DNA of 64,000 bases from Podarcis muralis. Taxonomy: Eukaryota. Location of the stretch: the NCBI RefSeq assembly GCF_964188315.1, contig NC_135667.1, forward strand, positions 45,942,001 through 46,006,000. Direction: 5' to 3'. Shown here in pieces: positions 22,892 to 35,000 of the stretch; position 1 is the stretch's first letter, and each line of letters opens with the position of its first letter. The position numbers and the translations under genes are program-made. The notes below the pieces were generated by a model. That model did no database searches and was not told the DNA's origin. It saw only the letters and a list, made by a program, of their open reading frames with translations.

Positions 22892-25800
22892 AACCAGTAC
22901 ACTTTGCGGTAGTCAGAATGCAAGTGCGGCCAAGACTTATTCCAAAACCTGCCACCTTGCTTGTCGCAGACGGCAGTTTGTTAAACCTTTCCCTGACCTG
23001 TAAGATTGGGCCCTCATTAATGCGTATGAACCCCCAGAATCTGTTTTATTTACTTTGATGTTGTCATACCGCTCTATTGATTCATCGTCTGCACTTTTGT
23101 TATAATGAATATAGTTTTTAATATTATTCATAGTGTAAGTACCGCTTAGAGATTTCAAAAAAAATGAAGTTGTTTTGAAAGGCTTTTAAAATAAATAAAT
23201 ATACCTGTTTGGTGTGGGTTGGCAGAACCAAACAAAACCTATGCAGGACACTTTAAAAGTACTATGATCATGTAGGAAGGGGGTGGTCTTGTTCTTTTTT
23301 GTGCTGGATATTATACACCTGTGCAAATTTTCATCATACTTACCTGGCATCACTCCAAACTGAAGCTTGAGTGAAGCCAATCCAACCATCTTTAGTCCTG
23401 GCAAGGTCAGTGGCCCAATAATACTTATTGCTGGATCTGAACCAGGAAAACCTGCTATTAGCACTCAGTGTAGGCCTAGATAGGGGCAGGGACGCATGCA
23501 ATGTCCCTGGGCTCCTCTCTGGCGTTTGCACTTGTAGCTTCCAAGGTCTGCTAAGGGTTTCTAAGCATTTTGAAGCCAGGTTCTCAATCACAGGGAGCTT
23601 TGCACATCTAAAAACGAGTCCATTAGGGACATTAGAGATAGGGCTTGCATGTGTGCCCATGTCCCATTGAAGTATCTCTGTGTTATAAGTGTAGCACTGA
23701 AGAAACCAAGAAACCGGGCTTGTCTCAAATTCTTTATTTTGCACCAGTTAGGGCAGAAAGAAACACTCAATAAAAACAAAAAAAGTATCATCCCACTACT
23801 GATACAGTGGGTAAGGTATGGTTGTTTTATTGCACTAAAATCTTGTTCTAATCCACATAACACAAAACCTAATGAAATAATGTCAGTTTCCCACCTCAAA
23901 AGTTATCAGCATCTTATTTTAAAAACTTCTGCAAGATGACAAATTACTCTATAAACTTCCACAATATTGGCTGATTTGTAAACACTAAAAAAGGCAGTTA
24001 AACACCATGATATTGCCACACAAATGCTACCAAAACCAAGCTGTTTCAAATATACAAAGCACCACCCTCTTGAGTCTTTTCTGCAAGAATGTGCTATTTA
24101 GGCATATAGCATCTACATCACATTACTGCTTGGCCAAGAAAACAATAGGCAGCGTATCACAGAGGTCTTCAGGTGCGAAGTCGGGAAAAATATGTAAACG
24201 CCTAACTACAGAGCCTGAAAGAGGGTGCAAGTTGAGCTGGAACTATGGGAACCTAGAAGGCTAATTGGATATGCAGGTATTCAAGATGGTTCAGTTCAGC
24301 AGATTCACAAGTTGTGAAAGTGGGCTGGAAACCTTTTAAATAAAACTAAAAGTAAAAGCACAGCATTTATTCAAGTCTCTCTTCAGTCCACAGAGGGTTA
24401 TCAGAATGGCTTTGCACCAAGAATAATTATTTCTAAGGTACACTCTTCCAATCTTTTTGTATACAAACCCAAAAAGTCTGGATGTGGTGTTCTATAAGGG
24501 AAGATATGGATCACCAACTTACTAGCTGCAGCACATAGCTCCACAGTAGGTTCTGTGAAGGTTCTCTGCAGGTCTGAGACACTGGTTAAAATCATACCAG
24601 CGTAGTTAACAACTTGTGCCGGTTTTACTGAAACAAGGCGAAACAGGTATCAGGGTTCCTGTGAAAATCCACACCAAAGCATTAGCAAAATCCAGATGCC
24701 ATTTGTAAATGGTTTATTCTTGAGGAACACAGCACCATCTTCACAGCAATGCACACAGTGCAACCAAGATATGGGAATTAGGTACCCTAAATCAGTCATC
24801 GAGCCAATCTAAATTTGGTCTTCAAATCCCTTTAGCCAAAACAATGCTGCCGCCATACTGATTGCAGAGATCCACAGAAATGATGGTATAGTCTCATTCT
24901 GTTAACAGAGGCTTTTTCTAATGAAATATTCTGAAGCTGTGATCCCCACTTTTATGCTCTACTTGCAAAACTGCACATATTGTGGGTGAGCAGGCCCTAG
25001 GAATCTGGGTTTGCTACTCGTTTTCATCTGTGATCCTAGGCTAAAAAAATTCTGTAGTACCTATATTGTTTTCTTCAAAAAGAGGGGGCCATCTGAGAGC
25101 ATAAAACATCCATGAATTCTGAAACAGGTGTCAAATGACCAGTGCATGGACACGTCAGGCTGACAGACCCTTTGCCACTACAGATTGCAGACTGTTTAGT
25201 GAGGAAGCATGTTCATGGTTCCCGCATAGGTGCTGGCTTTGGTGACAGACAGAGGGTAGCTAGGAGCCAAATATTTTGTTGCTTCTGCCCAAACCTTTAT
25301 GGTGCAGGGTGGAGGACATTTTTAGTGCTGGGAACCTCTCTGAAATAGTTAATAGTAAAGCGTGTGTGTGTGTGTGTGTGACTGTTTGCGTGAGTGTCCA
25401 ACCCACCAAAATATTATTGCCATTATCATGTGCGAGAAGAGCCAGAATAGAGCTCCAGAAGTTCAAAACATAAGGATTTGGGGTCATTACGTGCAAATGC
25501 TTACTCAGGATAGATAGATGCTGCTTCCAATACCTTGCAGATGTCAGGGTCCCATACACAAACATAACAGAGGTACACTCAATTGGATCTGAAGATTTCC
25601 TTCTTACAATCAGCAGCTGGGTACAAGTCACTTCCGTCACTCAAGAGATTTTAGAACTTGCTCTTTATCTGGCTTTTGAATAAAAGCCAATTCCTGTTGC
25701 CTGACTTCTGTTGCATTAAAGACGAGCTGAGATCTGTCTTCCAAGGCCCGTTTTGGAACGTGAACCACAACAGCGGGACATTTTGGCTTTGAACCAAGAG

Positions 25801-26025
25801 TGCAACACACAGCAAGCTAAAAAGGTGAAGGGCATGGCAGGTTCAGCAACAAATATCTTCCGATTCTGCACCAGAAGGGTTTTGTTCTAAAATTCACACT
25901 GTCTTCCAAATTTGCCCAATCAGGCTACACATCAAAGAATGGGGTATTATCCTACTCCTGCACAAGGCTCTCCATCTGTGCTCCATGAGACAGAAGAGCC
26001 ACAGCAGGGAAGGGAAGACAACTGT

Positions 26026-29000
26026 TTATTGGCCGCGGGAACTGGATGGATCCATCTGATTCAGCTCTGACTGATCCAGCAGTTCGAAGTCATCTCCTTC
26101 AGCATCTGTATCGAGCTCCGAGCTGGAGGTCCGGAGGAAGGCCCTGGCACTTTGCTGCCGTCTGTTGCCAGGCACGGAGCCAGACTGGGAGGCCCCTGAC
26201 AAGGCCAGCTGGATCATTCCCCTGGTTACAAAGCCAGCCAAGTCATCTGTGAGGTTGTGCATTAATGGCAGGTTACCTAGGATATCTGAGGTCACTTCCT
26301 CCCGGTCATGAGAAAGTCGCAGCTCTTCCTGGCCTTGTCCACGGCAGGCAAGGCTTGGTATGCCTATGCTGGTATCATCTTCATCGTCTATGCCTGTCAC
26401 CTCAGGGTTGATGGAAGGGAAATCTGGAAGATCTCGGGCAAAGGATTCCTCAGGGTCGCTGTGGCCATCAAAGTCTATTGAGAGAGAATTAGTTTGGCGA
26501 AAAGTCATTACAGTGGTGCCCCGCAAGACAAATGCCTCGCAAGACGAAAAACCCGCTAGACGAAAGGGTTTTCCATTTTTGAGTTGCTTCGCAAGACAAA
26601 TTTCCCTATGGGCTTGCTTCGCAAGACGAAAACGTCTTGCAAGTCTTGCGATTTTTTTCGCTCCCCCCCCCCTTTTTCTAAGCCGCTAATAGCGCTAATC
26701 CGCTAATAGGGTTGCTTCGCAAGACGAAAAAACCGCTAGACGAAGAGACTCGCGGAACGGATTATTTTCGTCTTGCGAGGCACCGCTGTACTCGGTTTCT
26801 TTGCCTACCACTAAGTAGTCTAACTTCCTATTGGAAAACAGGCAATAATTTCTTTAAAACTATATTGTCTTCCCACAGGGATCTATAATGTTGGGGGGCG
26901 AGTAAAAAATTAGAGTTATGAAACCTATTCCCAATACTTGACTGAGCTGCCTCTTCTGCAGGAGAGAGAAAATTTACAAAGCTTCTGTACTGCAGCAGAC
27001 CTCAGAATTGAATTTGAGGGACTAAGAACTAACTCTGTCTGGGTTCTGGCGTTCTTAATTTGCAAATGGGTCTTAAAACAATCCGACAGGCAGGAGCCTT
27101 TCTAACTCTTAACACCGGAAAGCTCTCAACTGAAGGTGCCGAGGACTGAAAGCTCCCATTTCAAAGAATAAAATTCCAGGTTCTGTCACTCAGTGGACCA
27201 GTGTACTCAACTCCTTCCTGAACCAATCTTTGTCTGCTTTATTCAATATAAACTACAAGATTTTTGGAGCAGGACCAAGGCAAACCTTCCATGTTGTACA
27301 GTACCTGGCTGGTCTCACTTTATCCAGGTTTGTAGCCCAACAACCAACAGCTGCAACAGTAGGATTAATATGTTATTTGGTAGCAACTAGGGACGCGGGT
27401 AGCGCTGTGGGTTAAACCACAGAGCCTAGGACTTGCTGATCAGAAGGTCGGAGGTTCGAATCCAATGGGGTGAGCTCCTGTTGCTCGGTCCCTGCTCCTA
27501 TCAACCTAGCAGTTCCAAAGCACGTCAAACTGCAAGTAGATAAATAGGTACCGCTCTGGCGGGAAGGTTAACGGCGTTTCCGTGCGCTGCTCTGGTTTGC
27601 CAGAAGCGGCTTAGTCATGCTGGCCACATGACCCGGAAGCTGTATGCCGGCTCCCTCGGCCAATAAAGCGAGATGAGCGCCGCAACCCCAGAGTCGGACA
27701 CGACTGGACCTAATGGTCAGGGGTCCCTTTACCTTTATGTTCTTTAATAACTTCGATAATAGCTGTCCTCACCTTCAGATCCCTCTGTCAGGGGGGTTTG
27801 ACCTCGTGAGAGATTAAATGTCCCATTCTCGGTATAGGATACTTCTGCATCAGAGTGCTCCGAATCAGAGATAGCCAGCTCTTTGGCAACTATTGCATCA
27901 TCCAACTTGAAAAGAAGCAAGTGATAAAAAAAAAAAAAGATCTAAGCAAGGTAATTTGGGGTTACTGGAGAGCACACATACCTCCACAATGCCATTCAAC
28001 ACCACATGGACCCAGAGACATTCCTCTCAGCAATGGAAATGAGGAACTTGAAAGCCAGGCACTGCCCTCCAGTCCTTCATTTCCATTCTGGATTCTTTAC
28101 TTCATTTTACAGCCACCTAAGTGTTGCCCAAAAATTGTTTTATAAAATTAAAAATCTCCTAAATCTGCTTCTGAAAGTACGAGATGTAGTTGTAATGAGG
28201 GAAATCCAATGGCGCTATAAAAAAATAATTTCATATTCAAGCTAAGAAGAATAGAGCCAGCAGGAGATGCTATATTTCAGAAATCAGGCAAGTTTGACCA
28301 TGAGTAAAAACTCACAGGCCGCCTTGTTGCTTACCCTCCCCCACTCCAATCTTAGCAGCACCCTATCTTAGCAGCGGGTGGCGCTGTGGTCTAAACCACA
28401 GAGCCTAGGCCTTGCCAATCAGAAGGTTGGCGGTTTGAATCCCTGCAACGGGGTGAGCTCCCATTGTTCAGTCCCTGCTCCTGCCAAACTAGCAGTTCGA
28501 AAGCACGTCAAAGTACAAGTAGATAAATAGGTACCTCTCTGGCGGGAAGGTAAATGGCGCTTCTGTGCGCTGCTCTGGTTCGCCAGAAGCGGCTTAGTCA
28601 TGCTGGCCACATGATCCGGAAGCTGTACGCCGGCTCCCTTGGCCAGTAAAGCAAGATGAGCGCCACAACCCCAGAGTCGCCCGCGACTGGACCTAATGGT
28701 CAGGGGTACCTTTACCTTTATTCTTTAACAAGATCCATGCCCTATTTACCGTGGGACAGAAAGCAGCAAGTTCTTCTTCACTGTCGCTCCCATCAGCACT
28801 AGCAGCATGATGGCTCAGCATCTTTTGTCGCACTGCAGAGAAATCAGAGGACAGAATAGCAGTTATAAATGGGAAGGAAACAACTCTGCATGCCCATAAA
28901 GAAGCCAAGCAGAAGAAACAGGTGTGATCCAGAGAGAAGACTTTGGGATTGCAAACCAGAGGCTGCAGAGGGTAGGAGGGGCGCTCCAAGAGCTAAAATG

Positions 29001-32000
29001 CTAACTGACCACTGTGCCCTAATTAGGACTGCAACAATTCCGGTCCCATGTTAGAAACAGTTTGGACATTCAATTGCTCATCAATTGTGGGAAATGCTCA
29101 TTCCCTTCCTCCCCCACCCCAACCCCCCCACAAACTGTGGTCAGGGATGCGAGGAACATTCTTAGGTAACTACTGATTCATTTAGTGTTTTCATCTGATC
29201 TTCTCAGGTTCCTCACATCACCAACAAAAAGAGGTGGCAGACAAGAAGTGGATGAGTTAGTACCAGCCCTGCACAAGACTTACATTGCCTCTCCTTATGT
29301 TTGGACATCATGTAGCCATGAACACTGAAGTCCAGCCGCTGCAGAGCTGGCTCCAATTTGGTGTACAGGCGGTGACCCAGCCGGTGGTAAACAGCAAGTG
29401 GCCACAGAAGGATGGAAACCACTGCAGGAAGAGGATAACAACAGGAGGACTCAAAGAAGGAACTTTTGGAAACTCAAGGCAGTAGAAACATAAGATGATT
29501 GGACCCCACTGAACTTGAAGCATGGGAAGCCCCAACAAAAATTTATAATTTGCAAAATATTTGGACTTCATGATGTGTATTTGTATAATTTGGAATATTT
29601 AATGTGATTTGATTGGATTGTTAAAATGGAAGACTTAATAAAAATTATTATTTTAAAAAAAGGAAACCACTGCAGGAAGAGGATGATTAGAGAGTTGGTG
29701 TTCAATAAACACTCTCAAGACGGCATTTTGGGATACAATATAATAGAACAAAGATATCATGTATTATATCATACATAAAGATCTTATCTAAACGTATAGA
29801 TATGTTTGTGGTTTTATTGTTTGCTTTATACTTTCTTCTTTTTTTGTAAACCACTTAATGGACTGTTTAATCATTATGTACACACAAGTTTGCAATGCAA
29901 CCCAGTTGGAACAGCTCAGAATAGCCTTGTTTGCAAATGCTCTGTACTTTCAAGTGAAGGGCACTCTGCTGCCCAATCCCCGCCCAACACAGATACTCAC
30001 TTGTTAGATAGGCAAGACAGACACCTGGAATGTACTGGCCCAACACAGCCAAAAATGTAAGGACACCGCAAGCCAGAAGGCAGAACTGGAAAACAAAACC
30101 CAAAGTTAGTCTCTACCGAATTGAGAAAAGCGAGCAAGGTGGCTCCTACGGCTCAAGACCATACAGACACACTTTGCTTGCTGCCAGCAAGCTAACTGCT
30201 TGGGAACAGAGACCAAAACAGAGGAATTCTGCTTGAGAAGCCTTGCATAAACATTAGGAGAGAGGGAGGGATGAACCTCATGAGCCACGACTGCCTTTGG
30301 ACCAAGCCCTGGAGTGATTTTGACAGAATCAGGGCAACATTTCTACTTTGGAACGTAGGTGGAAGCAAGACCAGTCCGATGAAAGCTCCATCTAATAGGA
30401 TGGCTGGAGTATTTTCCCATTTTGGCATCCCATTCCTCTTCCCCTTTATACCTGCCTCTCAATCCTCCAGTTTCCTTCTTTCCCAGTAAGGAAAGCACAC
30501 CTGTACAGAGTACTTTGCGTACACAGTTGCAGATGGATTATAAAAAGGACTCTGACCATTAGGTCCAGTCGTGGCAGACTCTGGGGTTGCGGTGCTCATC
30601 TTGCTTTATTGGCCGAGGGAGCCGGTGTACAGCTTCTGGGTCATGTGGCCAGCATGACTAAGCCGCTTCTGGCGAACCAGAGCAGCACACGGAAATGCCA
30701 TTTACCTTCCTGCTGGAGCGGTACCTATTTATCTACTTGTACTTTGACATGCTTTCGAACTGCTAGGTGGGCAGGAGCTGGGACCGAGCAACGGGAGCTC
30801 ACCCCGTCGCGGGGATTCGAACCGCCGACCTTCTGATCGGCAAGTCCTAGGCTCTGTGGTTTAACCCACAGCGCCCACCCACCTCCCAGATGCATTATAC
30901 CTCCACATAAAGAAAAGAGTAATTCAAACTGTTGCTATTCTTTCTTCTTTGCTCCTCCTTCTCCTCCAACCCATTCCCCGATGGCTAGTATCAATGAGGA
31001 CTGCTTTTCACCTTGCCCGGATTTTGCCTTTTGAAGCCCAACAGGTTCCTCATGAAGCTGTCTCCTGTGACCCATCCTTCTGCCAAATAGTGACATAGTT
31101 CAGGCACACTCAGCAGTCGGGGGTGGACGTAGCCCCAGCTGGAGGGACAACAAAAAAGGACATCTTACCTTGCTGATAAAATATCAGGAAAACCTACTGC
31201 AGTTTTAAAATAGCCCTCTTCTCATTCCACCTCATTGAAGCTGCTCAGGGTTCACGTTTCACACGCAGGAAACGGACCCTGCGTTTGAACTTGAAACCCA
31301 CACTTGCTTAATCTGAGCCCTTTCTAAAGCAGCAGCACTCCCAAACACATAACCCACAGAAGTGAATGAAATTTTCTCAATTCATTTCAATGGGATATGT
31401 GCAGAAGAATTTGACACTGGAGGCAACCTTCTAAAGGGCAGACAAGCCACTCACATGTATTCACAATTAGGCTGTTTAAAGGGTGTTAATGAGTACTTAA
31501 ATCTCCATGTCCTTGGCTGTGCACTCGAAGAGATTAAGGAGCAGTGAAGGGGTTGGATTTCCCCAGCTTTTCGACCCATTTTAACAGGAAAACTGGGGAT
31601 TCTAAGAACCCAGTGCATGCAGAGTTCAAGGCCTCAGATTTATGTAGCTTGCAGCCTAAGCCTAATACAGTGGTACCTTAGTTTACACATAATCCGTTCT
31701 GGAGGTCCGTTTGTAAACCAAAACAGGTTGTAACCCAAGGCATGCTTTCGCCAATGAGGCCTCCAAAAATTTTTTGTTTGGTTAAAAAAAAAAGGGGTTG
31801 TAATCCAGAAAAAGGTTGCAAACCGGGACACGCACCTCCGGGTTTGACGTGTTTGTAATCCAAAACGTATGCAAACCAGGACGTATGCAAACCAAGGTAG
31901 CACTGTAATGGTTTACAGCACAATACTCTACATGGCAACTCAGAATGATGTCCTATTCACTGCAATAGGACACAGAATTGCAACCTTACTCTGGAACCTA

Positions 32001-35000
32001 GCAGTAGACTTTCTCCCAAGCAAGCATAGGATCGCAGCCTTAGTTACAAACTATGAGAAGAGGTAGGTAAGCGACAATATTTAGGAGCAAGGGATCTTTC
32101 CTTTCATCCAGCCATGGAAGGGCATTCATTTGCCAATAAGGTTTAAATTAACAAAAAGCATTACAGCTAAGCCACACAAGCACATGTAACATGAGACATG
32201 CTACAAAGAAAAGGATATTCAATTTTTCATACCTTTCATTGTCTAATTCATCAGGTCTTGCTACTAAAACATTAAAGACAGATGAGGATTAGTTGTGAGG
32301 GAAATGCCTGGGAAAACTCTTTGCTGCATAATTAAAATACACAGATGACTTGAGAATAATGCATAATTGTTTCCCACTGACAGCCTGCAACCGAAAACAT
32401 CCTGAGCTTAGTATTTTATCCTGTGCCCCCACTTTTATAAACTCAACTTTTTTATTTATTACGTTTGTAATTTTGTACAGATGCAATTGTACAATTGTAG
32501 AAATGGTTCTGTTGCCTTTAGTTTACAAATGCAAACATTTTGTATTTTATTGCACGCTGCTATTTTGTTGTCGTTTGTGAGGCAGTTTATAAATCTGCAA
32601 ATATATTTAAAATGTATTTTAAAAATTAAAACACTGCTCAAGATAGCTTCTTGTAATGCTCTTATTATTATAGCAGCCTGGGGGTGGGGCTAGCAGTCAA
32701 TGATCTGGTTAGCATGTAATGCTAAACCTCACCATAGCTTAGTGCAAATGTGTGGGTTGCCAGAGAAGATATTACGGTCACTTTGCTTTTCAGTCATTCA
32801 TGTACCGTAATCTGAAATCAAGCTCATGGTCTGACACAAAAGTAACTCAAGTTTACCCTTGTTTTACAGCTCGTGGTTTATCTTATGGAGACAGACCACA
32901 AGCTTGGGTTTGGATGACATACTAAGCCAAACTATGGCTTAGCTCATAGCAGCAGGACTGGAGGAACAAGAAACCACCATCTCCTCTCCCAAGGACCTGC
33001 GGCCTTGCACTAAACCATGATTTTGCTTAGCATTATGTGCAACCTGAACTAATACTCTTTTAGTTCTTATCTAAGATGATAGTTCTCAAAATTTAAGCAG
33101 GCTTTCAATTGGGAACAAGTTTTTTTAAAATCAAATATTACCTCAGCTCCAGCATGTTAGAGAGAAAAACCATCAGGTTTCAGTCTTCAATGAAGCCTTT
33201 AAAACTACTGCTTTAATTTATTCTTCCATCCTTCATGAATACAGCTTTCTATATCATAAACTACTACTATAGTCAACAAATAAATTTTTTTACCATAGGT
33301 TACCTTCCTAAGAAATTATACTATGGTTTTGTTGAATTGACTTGACTGCTTTCAGACTAAAATATAATTTAAGATATACACCAAGATGTTAGTTCAATGC
33401 TCAATTTAATGATGAACTAAAGCCTGGACTGTATGTCTCTATAACCAATAAGAAAAAATACCCCTTTGGAATTTTAACATTGATAAACAAAGGCTTTTTC
33501 TGGAGCTAGAGAACAAAAGCAGATCTTTGGAACATCTGAGATCTGGGTAAGTGACCTTGGAAAGCAAAACTCCAACACATGAACAAGCAGTGAAAATGCA
33601 GCAACCTGAAATACAAATCCCAATTTTCCAAACCACCAGTTTCATTATGGTGGAATTGCTCCTCTCCCTCCCACCACCTGAGCAGCCAGGGTGCCTTTTC
33701 AACACTATCAACTCCTAAACATTCATTTCAACTAGGAAGGCGCCCAGTTTACAAGATCTTTGTCAATGACTGTTTTGATTAATGAGATCTGCAATTTCTT
33801 GAGTTCAGAAATGGGGGTGGGGGAAGAGACCACAGCTGAATTCAAGGGTCAAGTAGGGAAAAACATACCTCTTATTTCAGGCCATATTTTATTCTTCCAC
33901 TGATCTAAACACACTATTAGTATCAGGGTGAAAGCAACCAAGAATATCAGGTGAAGAGACGTCAGAGCAAAAAACCTGAGGGAAAATAAAGCTAGTCAGT
34001 ACACAATTTTCTTCTAGAAATGTTACCTTAAAAGCAAGAGCTGATGTTAGGCCATGGAGCAGGAAAAGCCCAAGATAAATAATTGTTGCCTTATGATTGG
34101 CAGGAAGAGGTTAGAAAACAACGGGTAAGGAATGGAAGGTATCACAACAGCTCTTTGGAGTATATTTCCATTAGGGTTAAATAATGTGTGAGAGAGGATT
34201 TTGTGTGTGTGACCTCTATGACATCCACCAGATATCATCCTGTTTCTGATCAATGATCTGAAAACTGATCATTTTACCTATTCCCTCTGCCAATCAAGAA
34301 GGAAACTGACATTTATGGCAGCTGCAGCTTATTTATTATCATTATATTGAAATCTTAAGCATATGGGTTGCTATGGACAGGAATCAGTTTACAATGGCTT
34401 GTACCTTCTGGCAGGACAATGTTTAAAGAGACTAAGATCAAGGGGAGAAAAATTGTTCGGCATCAAGTGTAAGGAGTTTGCAGAAAAGCGGGAGAAAGCT
34501 GAAAATTGCCTATGGACCACAGAAAGAAGTGTGTGTATGTATTCTCATGTTATTCTTATTTATCTCTTAAAAGTTATTATAAACAAATGAGTATCATCAT
34601 ATCAGGCATTTAGAAAGTATTCAAGTCAGTGGTCACTTTCCACTCAATTATAACCAGAAGCAAAATCTGCAGTGCTACAAAGCTTATTTAAGATCAATCT
34701 GCAACTGTAAGCTGTAAACTGTGAATAAGAGTTACACAGCTTTCTATAGTCAAAATTATTTTTACCATAAATGTAAACATGTAAAGGGACGCAGGTGGCG
34801 CTGTGGGTTAAACCACAGAGCCTAGGACTTGCTGTCAGCGGTTCGAATCCCTGTGATGGGGTGAGCTCCCGTTGCTCGGTCCCAGCTCCTGCCAACCTAG
34901 CAGTTCGAAAGCACGTCAAAGTGCAAGTAGATAAATAGGTACCGCTCCGGCGGGAAGGTAAACGGCGTTTCCGTGTGCTGCTATGGTTCGCCAGAAGCGG

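What the first reader, a model, noticed from the sequence alone, without database searches (positions are those of the whole stretch)
29414..29684. Retroposon TSD duplicated the RETREG3 exon 6 splice acceptor, creating a poison decoy
Seen: the 23-bp TSD reads ATCCTCTTCCTGCAG|TGGTTTCC on the transcript strand, so the acceptor exists twice. The upstream copy (AG at 29671-29670) keeps the native intron and branch-point context but reads A|TG GTT TCC TTT TTT TAA, an immediate stop. The downstream copy (AG at 29423-29422) leads into the real exon, but everything beyond 15 nt upstream of it is now TE-derived. Inference: correct splicing must skip the first AG and use a branch point donated by the 225-bp insert; use of the decoy would add 248 nt and trigger NMD or truncate the ER-phagy receptor before its LIR. 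This is a natural rheostat or hypomorphic allele produced purely by target-site duplication.
Basis: partly seen in the sequence, partly recalled or inferred. Interest (0 to 1): 0.75.

Follow-up and report, generated by a model that had tools for sequence, protein, structure and literature searches.

The report
Old retroposon duplicated a lizard splice site
In wall lizards, a small jumping-gene copy landed on the start of exon 6 of the ER-recycling gene RETREG3 over ten million years ago and duplicated its splice signal, yet the gene is still intact and conserved, so this is a long-tolerated natural splicing experiment and not a defective allele.

Summary
A perfect 23-nt direct repeat (29414-29436 and 29662-29684) flanks a 225-nt A-tailed insert lying antisense in Podarcis muralis RETREG3. 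The repeat spans the intron 5/exon 6 junction, so the acceptor exists twice, and the upstream copy reads into a stop after five codons.

New here: Lacerta agilis and Zootoca vivipara carry the empty site with a single 23-mer. P. muralis, P. raffonei and P. lilfordi all carry the insert and both repeat copies. The insertion is therefore real, made by target-primed retroposition, and shared across deep branches of the genus (major clades split about 17-10 Mya). It is not a private hypomorphic allele or an assembly artefact.

All nine exons are intact. Public annotation uses the downstream acceptor. The coding sequence has stayed under purifying selection since the insertion (11 synonymous to 1 non-synonymous codon change, muralis vs raffonei).

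The upstream copy keeps the native branch-point match, pyrimidine tract and AG in all three species. The working acceptor must use a branch point inside the insert (best candidate 29451).

Whether the decoy is used, and any "rheostat" role, stays untested because no RNA data were reachable. The closest known case is the canine Merle SINE in PMEL. Verdict: new member of a known kind, moderate interest.

The parts
26026..38850 (-). RETREG3 (FAM134C) coding region, nine exons, all open with canonical splice sites
   Evidence: Exon pieces were located. Pfam PF24456 hits. The translations equal P0188, XP_028560952.2. The LIR motif DDFELL lies in exon 9 and the stop TAA at 26028-26026.
30001..30085 (-). 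Exon 5 (85 nt, ends in phase 1); donor GT at 30000-29999
   Evidence: Pfam profile positions 123-149; the donor is identical in 4 of 5 lacertids.
29685..30000 (-). Native part of intron 5, with the best native branch-point match (ctctaAt, A at 29687, 18 nt before the decoy exon start)
   Evidence: yUnAy 4/4. The motif is kept in all five lacertids.
29662..29684 (-). Upstream TSD copy, the decoy acceptor (AG 29671-29670, then 8 nt of exon 6 sequence)
   Evidence: invariant in three Podarcis species.
29653..29655 (-). Premature TAA reached five codons after the decoy junction
   Evidence: Stops also follow the decoy in P. raffonei and P. lilfordi, read from the alignment.
29437..29661 (+). 225-nt poly(A) retroposon fragment, antisense to RETREG3 (AATAAA 29637-29642, A-tail 29655-29661)
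   Evidence: Present in three Podarcis at 91.5-94% identity and absent from Lacerta and Zootoca. No tRNA, Rfam family or terminal inverted repeats.
29451..29451 (-). Best candidate branch-point A donated by the insert (ctttgAg, 30 nt before exon 6), followed by an 81% pyrimidine tract
   Evidence: The motif is identical in three Podarcis. This is a prediction only.
29414..29436 (-). Downstream TSD copy, the working acceptor (AG 29423-29422) plus the first 8 nt of exon 6
   Evidence: It is the acceptor used in the annotated proteins of all three Podarcis.
29284..29421 (-). Exon 6 (138 nt), the end of the reticulon-homology domain

Best explanation
Shown: in an ancestor of the sampled Podarcis wall lizards, a 5'-truncated polyadenylated RNA (a LINE 3' end or an mRNA 3' end) was copied into RETREG3 by target-primed reverse transcription, antisense to the gene. 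The two nicks lay 23 nt apart and straddled the intron 5/exon 6 junction. Repair therefore duplicated the last 15 nt of the intron (pyrimidine tract plus CAG) and the first 8 nt of the exon. The insertion is shared by P. muralis, P. raffonei and P. lilfordi. The gene has remained intact and selectively constrained, and annotated messages use the downstream copy. Inferred: productive splicing assembles on a branch point and pyrimidine tract supplied by the last roughly 45 nt of the insert (best candidate A at 29451). The upstream copy still has its native branch point, tract and AG. It therefore probably captures some share of transcripts, adding 248 nt with an early stop that nonsense-mediated decay should clear. 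On this reading the decoy is a constant, tolerated loss of output, not a regulated switch.
For: Lacerta agilis and Zootoca vivipara have the empty site with one 23-mer, while three Podarcis have the filled site. Divergence inside the insert (6% and 8.5%) is at least as large as across the locus (3.1% and 4.7%), so the insert is as old as the species splits. Major Podarcis clades split about 16.7-9.8 Mya (PMC8114931). Purifying selection after the insertion shows as 11 synonymous to 1 non-synonymous codon differences (muralis vs raffonei) and 16 to 8 (muralis vs lilfordi). The proteins of all three species read LAYLT-MVSILLWPL across the junction. The native branch-point match lies at -18 of the decoy. 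For the real acceptor, the only candidates inside the AG-free zone are A -30 and A -15, judged by the scanning rule in PMC1431707. Both acceptors share positions -15 to +8 by construction, so their core strengths are nearly equal. No Podarcis-specific change lies within 50 nt upstream of the decoy or in either donor.
Against: No transcript data were available. Use of the decoy, the branch points and NMD are all predictions. The branch-point calls rest on a simple consensus count, not a trained predictor. The source element was not identified, and no second copy exists in the 64-kb window or in the five loci. The first-strand nick site (TTTCC/AT on the gene's sense strand) is not the classical L1 TTTT/AA. 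Wall lizards introgress heavily (PMC8114931), so sharing among species could partly reflect gene flow and the age is approximate. The low variability of the last ~106 nt of the insert (2 variable sites) is not significant: 11% of intron windows are as low.
Confidence: 0.55

Rival explanations
1. Silent decoy. The upstream copy is essentially never used, because only 8 nt of exon sequence follow it before a U-run and 70% A+T retroposon sequence with no usable donor. Exon definition therefore pairs the exon 6 donor only with the downstream acceptor. The duplication is then a neutral relic.
For: No donor-like GT scoring 4/7 or better lies between the decoy and the exon 6 donor, so the decoy would define a 386-nt exon. 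The gene is under normal purifying selection. Annotation lists only the downstream acceptor, and the two isoforms differ only at exon 3. The conservation of the decoy is no greater than neutral expectation.
Against: The decoy is an exact copy of an acceptor that worked, with its native branch point 18 nt upstream. It is transcribed first and closes a short 331-nt intron. Under the scanning rule a spliceosome built on the native branch point must take this AG (PMC1431707). Annotation pipelines rarely report NMD-bound isoforms.
Confidence: 0.33
2. Regulated rheostat. The choice between decoy and real acceptor is tuned by tissue or stress, so that unproductive splicing sets the RETREG3 dose.
For: The decoy 23-mer, native branch point and early stop are kept in three species after more than about 10 My. 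The oligo(T) run next to the decoy varies (7, 12 and 10 nt), which recalls the length-dependent splicing switch of canine Merle (PMC6091007).
Against: Retention is within neutral expectation: about 1.3 variable sites are expected in 23 nt, and zero has probability about 0.26 from the rates. No conserved structure was found (fold z = +1.14). No regulatory motif was tested and no RNA data exist. Outgroup lizards manage without it.
Confidence: 0.1
3. Private hypomorphic allele or assembly artefact of the reference individual.
For: None beyond the perfect identity of the two repeat copies in P. muralis.
Against: The same insert sits at the same site in the separate assemblies of P. raffonei and P. 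lilfordi, with its own substitutions and indels. Only one P. muralis assembly was examined, because L005 is identical to the window.
Confidence: 0.01

Closest known systems
Canine Merle allele: antisense SINEC_Cf at the intron 10/exon 11 boundary of PMEL (PMC6091007, PMC7349775)
   Same: Both have a retroposon inserted antisense exactly at an intron/exon boundary. In both, the target-site duplication (15 bp in Merle) contains the original acceptor. The A-tail reads as oligo(T) in the transcript, and an original and an alternative acceptor compete. In Merle the outcome is graded, a true splicing rheostat.
   Different: In Merle the competing site is a cryptic AG inside the SINE, fed by a very long oligo(T) of 25-105 nt. 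The product stays in frame, the allele is young and segregates within one species, and the splicing effect is proven. Here the competitor is the duplicated native acceptor itself with its native branch point. The oligo(T) is short (7-12 nt) and the product carries an early stop. The insertion is shared by three species over more than about 10 My, and the splicing outcome is unmeasured.
Disease-causing Alu/L1 insertions at splice acceptors, for example two independent Alu insertions into the NF1 intron 14 acceptor (PMC3219598)
   Same: L1-type retroposition into an acceptor, with flanking target-site duplications and effects on splicing.
   Different: Those are de novo pathogenic events that wreck splicing. 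The lizard insertion is fixed and compatible with a conserved, working gene.
Unproductive splicing coupled to NMD (poison exons and poison splice sites)
   Same: Use of the decoy would add 248 nt and a stop far upstream of three later exon junctions, which is the classical NMD trigger.
   Different: Known regulatory poison sites are defined by measured, regulated use and by conservation above background. Neither is shown here.

Membership tests
LINE-mediated (target-primed) poly(A) retroposon insertion | Flanking direct target-site duplication | tested here: met
   A 23-nt exact repeat flanks the insert, and the outgroups carry it once.
LINE-mediated (target-primed) poly(A) retroposon insertion | 3' A-tail abutting the duplication, with an upstream polyadenylation signal | tested here: met
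   A7 in P. muralis, with AATAAA 12 nt upstream. The run is 12 and 10 nt in the other two species.
LINE-mediated (target-primed) poly(A) retroposon insertion | Orthologous empty site in relatives | tested here: met
   Lacerta agilis and Zootoca vivipara.
LINE-mediated (target-primed) poly(A) retroposon insertion | First-strand nick at an L1-type TTTT/AA site | tested here: not met
   The nick falls at TTTCC/AT on the gene's sense strand. It is T-rich but non-canonical. The specificity of lizard LINE endonucleases was not examined.
LINE-mediated (target-primed) poly(A) retroposon insertion | Identifiable source element or other genomic copies | tested here: inconclusive
   No other copy exists in the window or in the five loci, and earlier scan notes held nothing. 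The whole genome could not be searched.
RETREG3 / FAM134C | N-terminal reticulon-homology domain | tested here: met
   PF24456 hits on exons 1, 2, 4, 5 and 6 in profile order.
RETREG3 / FAM134C | C-terminal LIR motif (DDFELL) | tested here: met
   Present in exon 9. It is functional in mammalian FAM134C (PMC8447607).
RETREG3 / FAM134C | Orthology: named orthologues and conserved neighbours | tested here: met
   The best full-length relatives are named reticulophagy regulator 3. The sequence is identical to the P. muralis RefSeq protein. The gene is flanked by a 451-aa tubulin gene and PSMC3IP.
Merle-like splicing rheostat | Antisense retroposon at an intron/exon boundary, with the acceptor inside the duplication | tested here: met
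Merle-like splicing rheostat | Measured, graded use of two acceptors | not testable with these tools
   No RNA-seq or transcript contigs of Podarcis RETREG3 were reachable. The 90% cluster of P0188 holds only genome-derived entries.
Poison splice site (AS-NMD) | Premature stop more than about 50 nt upstream of a later exon junction | tested here: met
   The stop lies five codons after the decoy junction, and three introns follow.
Poison splice site (AS-NMD) | Conservation above neutral background | tested here: inconclusive
   The decoy is invariant in three species, but P is about 0.26 under the local rate. The acceptor-proximal part of the insert is low in variation but not significantly so.

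The most novel reading that the evidence does not exclude
The duplicated acceptor is a transposon-born poison 3' splice site that Podarcis has kept for more than 10 My as a regulated brake on RETREG3 dose. The neighbouring oligo(T) length (7, 12 or 10 nt) would tune the brake differently in each species. This would be a wild, fixed counterpart of the dog Merle rheostat, acting through NMD.
Probability: 0.1. Interest if true: 0.65.

Novelty: new member of a known kind. Interest (0 to 1): 0.4.

Why it matters
Retroposon hits on splice acceptors are known almost only as fresh, harmful mutations or as breed alleles. Here one has been carried by a whole lizard genus for millions of years in an essential-looking ER-phagy receptor gene. 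Empty-site outgroups are available as natural controls. That makes a clean test bed for three questions: how a spliceosome chooses between two identical acceptors 248 nt apart, whether a transposon can supply a working branch point, and how much unproductive splicing a gene can tolerate. Public P. muralis RNA-seq could settle the main question in a day. If the decoy proves silent, the case is a neat but neutral curiosity.

Tried and rejected
1. RNA structure that hides the decoy or brings the native branch point near the real AG: the fold of 29400-29760 is no more stable than shuffles (z = +1.14). Rejected.
2. SINE with a tRNA, 7SL or 5S head, or a DNA transposon: no tRNA, no Rfam hit and no terminal inverted repeats. 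Rejected.
3. Other copies of the insert: none in the window or the five loci, and nothing in earlier notes.
4. Selection on the insert-derived branch-point region: 2 variable sites in the last ~106 nt against a mean of 6.2 per 114-nt intron window, but 11% of windows are as low. Not significant.
5. Compensatory changes in Podarcis that weaken the decoy or strengthen the donors: none within 50 nt of the decoy or at either donor.
6. A second donor inside the insert that would make a mini-exon or allow re-splicing: none scoring 4/7 or better.
7. Word search with the exon 6 reading frame found only bird-like and mammal-like ORFs from read assemblies, and no lacertid. The mammal-like ones (P0063, P0064, P0066-P0068) could come from human or other mammalian DNA. 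I did not fetch, save or compare their contigs.
8. An alignment of single exon pieces to a sturgeon protein (A1) scattered the fragments and was not used as a query.
Exons were searched one by one by reference. Full-length comparisons used the database proteins P0188, P0190, P0289, P0288 and P0293, and codon counts were made exon by exon.
10. No trained splice-site or branch-point predictor was available offline, so only consensus counts are given.

Full report
**What is there.** On the minus strand, exon 5 of a RETREG-family gene ends at 30001 in phase 1, with its donor GT at 30000-29999. Downstream lie two identical 23-nt stretches, at 29684-29662 and 29436-29414. Each consists of 15 nt of pyrimidine-rich intron ending in CAG, followed by TGGTTTCC. 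About 3e-5 exact 23-mer pairs are expected by chance in 64 kb.

The 225 nt between the copies (29437-29661) are 70% A+T. On the plus strand they end with AATAAA, a 12-nt spacer and A7. These are the marks of a polyadenylated RNA copied in by target-primed reverse transcription, lying antisense to the gene.

The insert has no tRNA-like head, no Rfam match and no terminal inverted repeats. No second copy exists in the window.

After the upstream AG (29671-29670) the frame reads M V S F F, then a stop at 29655-29653. After the downstream AG (29423-29422) it reads the conserved MVSILLWPLAVYH... of exon 6.

**Which gene, which animal.** Translations of exons 1, 2, 4, 5 and 6 match consecutive parts of Pfam PF24456, the reticulon-homology domain of RETREG1-3. 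All nine exons are open and have canonical splice sites. Exon 9 carries the LIR motif DDFELL.
- A profile-free search with exon 9 found proteins named reticulophagy regulator 3.
- Two further searches led to XP_028560952.2, RETREG3 isoform X1 of Podarcis muralis (P0188). Its sequence equals the window's exon translations, including LAYLT-MVSILL across the exon 5/6 junction.
- The locus fetched for that protein (L005, assembly GCA_964188315.1) is identical to window 25026-39850, so the window is P. muralis.
- The flanking genes are a 451-aa tubulin gene, head to head, and PSMC3IP, which has a TBPIP/Hop2 domain.
- From memory, TUBG1-RETREG3-PSMC3IP is also the human arrangement.
- 'RETREG3 exon 6' is therefore right.
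- The two annotated isoforms differ only by a TAG-TAG tandem acceptor at exon 3, not at exon 6.

**The decisive comparison.** I fetched the RETREG3 loci of P. raffonei, P. lilfordi, Lacerta agilis and Zootoca vivipara. In Lacerta and Zootoca the two flanks of the insert abut, overlapping by exactly one copy of the 23-mer. This is a textbook empty site.

In all three Podarcis species the insert and both repeat copies are present at the same position. The insert is 94% identical between muralis and raffonei and 91.5% between muralis and lilfordi, with lineage-specific indels. That divergence is at least as large as over the whole locus (3.1% and 4.7%). The insertion is therefore as old as these species splits.

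The three species belong to different major groups, whose separation is dated to about 16.7-9.8 Mya (PMC8114931). The same paper documents heavy introgression, so the date is approximate.

This rules out an assembly artefact and a private allele. The perfect identity of the two copies in P. muralis does not mean youth. In P. raffonei and P. lilfordi the downstream copy carries a CT-to-TC swap that keeps the pyrimidines.

**Is the gene still working?** Yes, by every sequence test available.
- Between insertion-bearing species, codon differences are 11 synonymous to 1 non-synonymous (muralis vs raffonei) and 16 to 8 (muralis vs lilfordi). This indicates clear purifying selection.
- The annotated proteins of all three species use the downstream acceptor.

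**How splicing must cope (inference).** The two acceptors are identical from -15 to +8, so their core strength is nearly equal by construction.

The decoy keeps the native upstream context. A perfect yUnAy match (ctctaAt) has its A at 29687, 18 nt before the decoy exon start, and no AG intervenes. This motif is conserved in all five lacertids. Under the scanning rule the first AG more than about 12-15 nt downstream of a branch point is used (PMC1431707). A spliceosome built on the native branch point must therefore take the decoy.

The real acceptor has AGs at -30, -43 and -53, so its branch point has to lie in the last roughly 45 nt of the insert. The best candidate is ctttgAg with A at 29451 (-30), followed by an 81% pyrimidine tract. 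A second, very close candidate is A -15 at the insert/repeat junction. Both are invariant in the three Podarcis.

Use of the decoy would add 248 nt and a stop upstream of three further introns, which is the usual NMD trigger. It would also cut off the end of the reticulon-homology domain and the LIR, which FAM134C function needs in mammals (PMC8447607).

**Is the decoy used?** I could not test this. The protein collection holds no transcript-derived Podarcis entry for this gene, and no RNA-seq tool was available.

Arguments for some use:
- the decoy is an exact copy of a proven acceptor, with its native branch point;
- it is transcribed first;
- it closes a short 331-nt intron.

Arguments against:
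- only 8 nt of exon follow it before a U-run and A+T-rich sequence;
- no donor-like site lies in the insert, so it would define a 386-nt exon.

Evolution does not decide either. The decoy 23-mer is invariant in three species, but zero changes in 23 nt has a probability of about 0.26 at the local rate. The last ~106 nt of the insert have 2 variable sites against a mean of 6.2 per 114-nt intron window, yet 11% of windows are as low. No Podarcis-specific substitution has weakened the decoy or altered the donors. No RNA structure stands out (z = +1.14).

I put a constant leak into NMD at about 0.55, a silent decoy at about 0.33 and a regulated rheostat at about 0.1.

**Comparison with what is known.** The closest case is canine Merle. 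There a SINE lies antisense at the PMEL intron 10/exon 11 boundary, its 15-bp target-site duplication holds the original acceptor, and the length of its oligo(T) sets the ratio of two acceptors (PMC6091007, PMC7349775). Alu insertions into the NF1 intron 14 acceptor are a disease counterpart (PMC3219598).

The lizard case differs in several ways:
- the competitor is the duplicated native acceptor itself;
- the predicted product is NMD-bound and not in frame;
- the oligo(T) is short, although it varies among species (7, 12 and 10 nt);
- the insertion has been fixed in wild species for millions of years.

It is a new member of a known kind.

**Limits and housekeeping.**
- The source element is unidentified, and the first-strand nick site (TTTCC/AT) is not the classical L1 site.
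- Exons were never joined into a spliced model. They were searched one by one by reference, and full-length work used database proteins.
- Mammal-like ORFs found might derive from human or other mammalian reads. Their contigs were not fetched or compared.
I did not examine it.

Noticed in passing
window 32259-32267 (minus strand): The exon 3 acceptor of RETREG3 is a TAG-TAG tandem acceptor. It explains the one-residue difference (Val118) between the annotated isoforms X1 and X2.
   Followed up: partly
window 29474-29473 (minus strand): A GAG inside the insert would, if used as an acceptor, add 51 nt in frame with no stop (17 extra residues). It is the only cryptic AG between decoy and real site that keeps the frame open. 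GAG acceptors are weak.
   Followed up: no
A2 alignment columns 353-355; loci L001 and L002: The downstream repeat copy carries the same CT-to-TC swap in P. raffonei and P. lilfordi. Yet over the whole locus muralis-raffonei (3.1%) is closer than raffonei-lilfordi (6.1%). This mixed signal would fit the mosaic ancestry reported for wall lizards.
   Followed up: no
window 35129-34647, 28724-28422, 27768-27415 (minus-strand frames): Three copies of one interspersed repeat inside RETREG3 introns share a long open frame ([24 protein letters not shown]...). The family was not identified.
   Followed up: no
window about 45100, 41000, 39800, 37600, 21000, 20600, 20000: Many interspersed repeats end in long trinucleotide (ATT/AAT-type) microsatellite tails. 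The RETREG3 insert, by contrast, has a plain A-tail, which suggests a different mobilising LINE.
   Followed up: no
window 2497-2875: A (TGA)11 microsatellite and 2.3 copies of a 101-nt tandem repeat.
   Followed up: partly
window 38850-39240: RETREG3 and the neighbouring 451-aa tubulin gene lie head to head about 400 nt apart, which suggests a shared bidirectional promoter.
   Followed up: no
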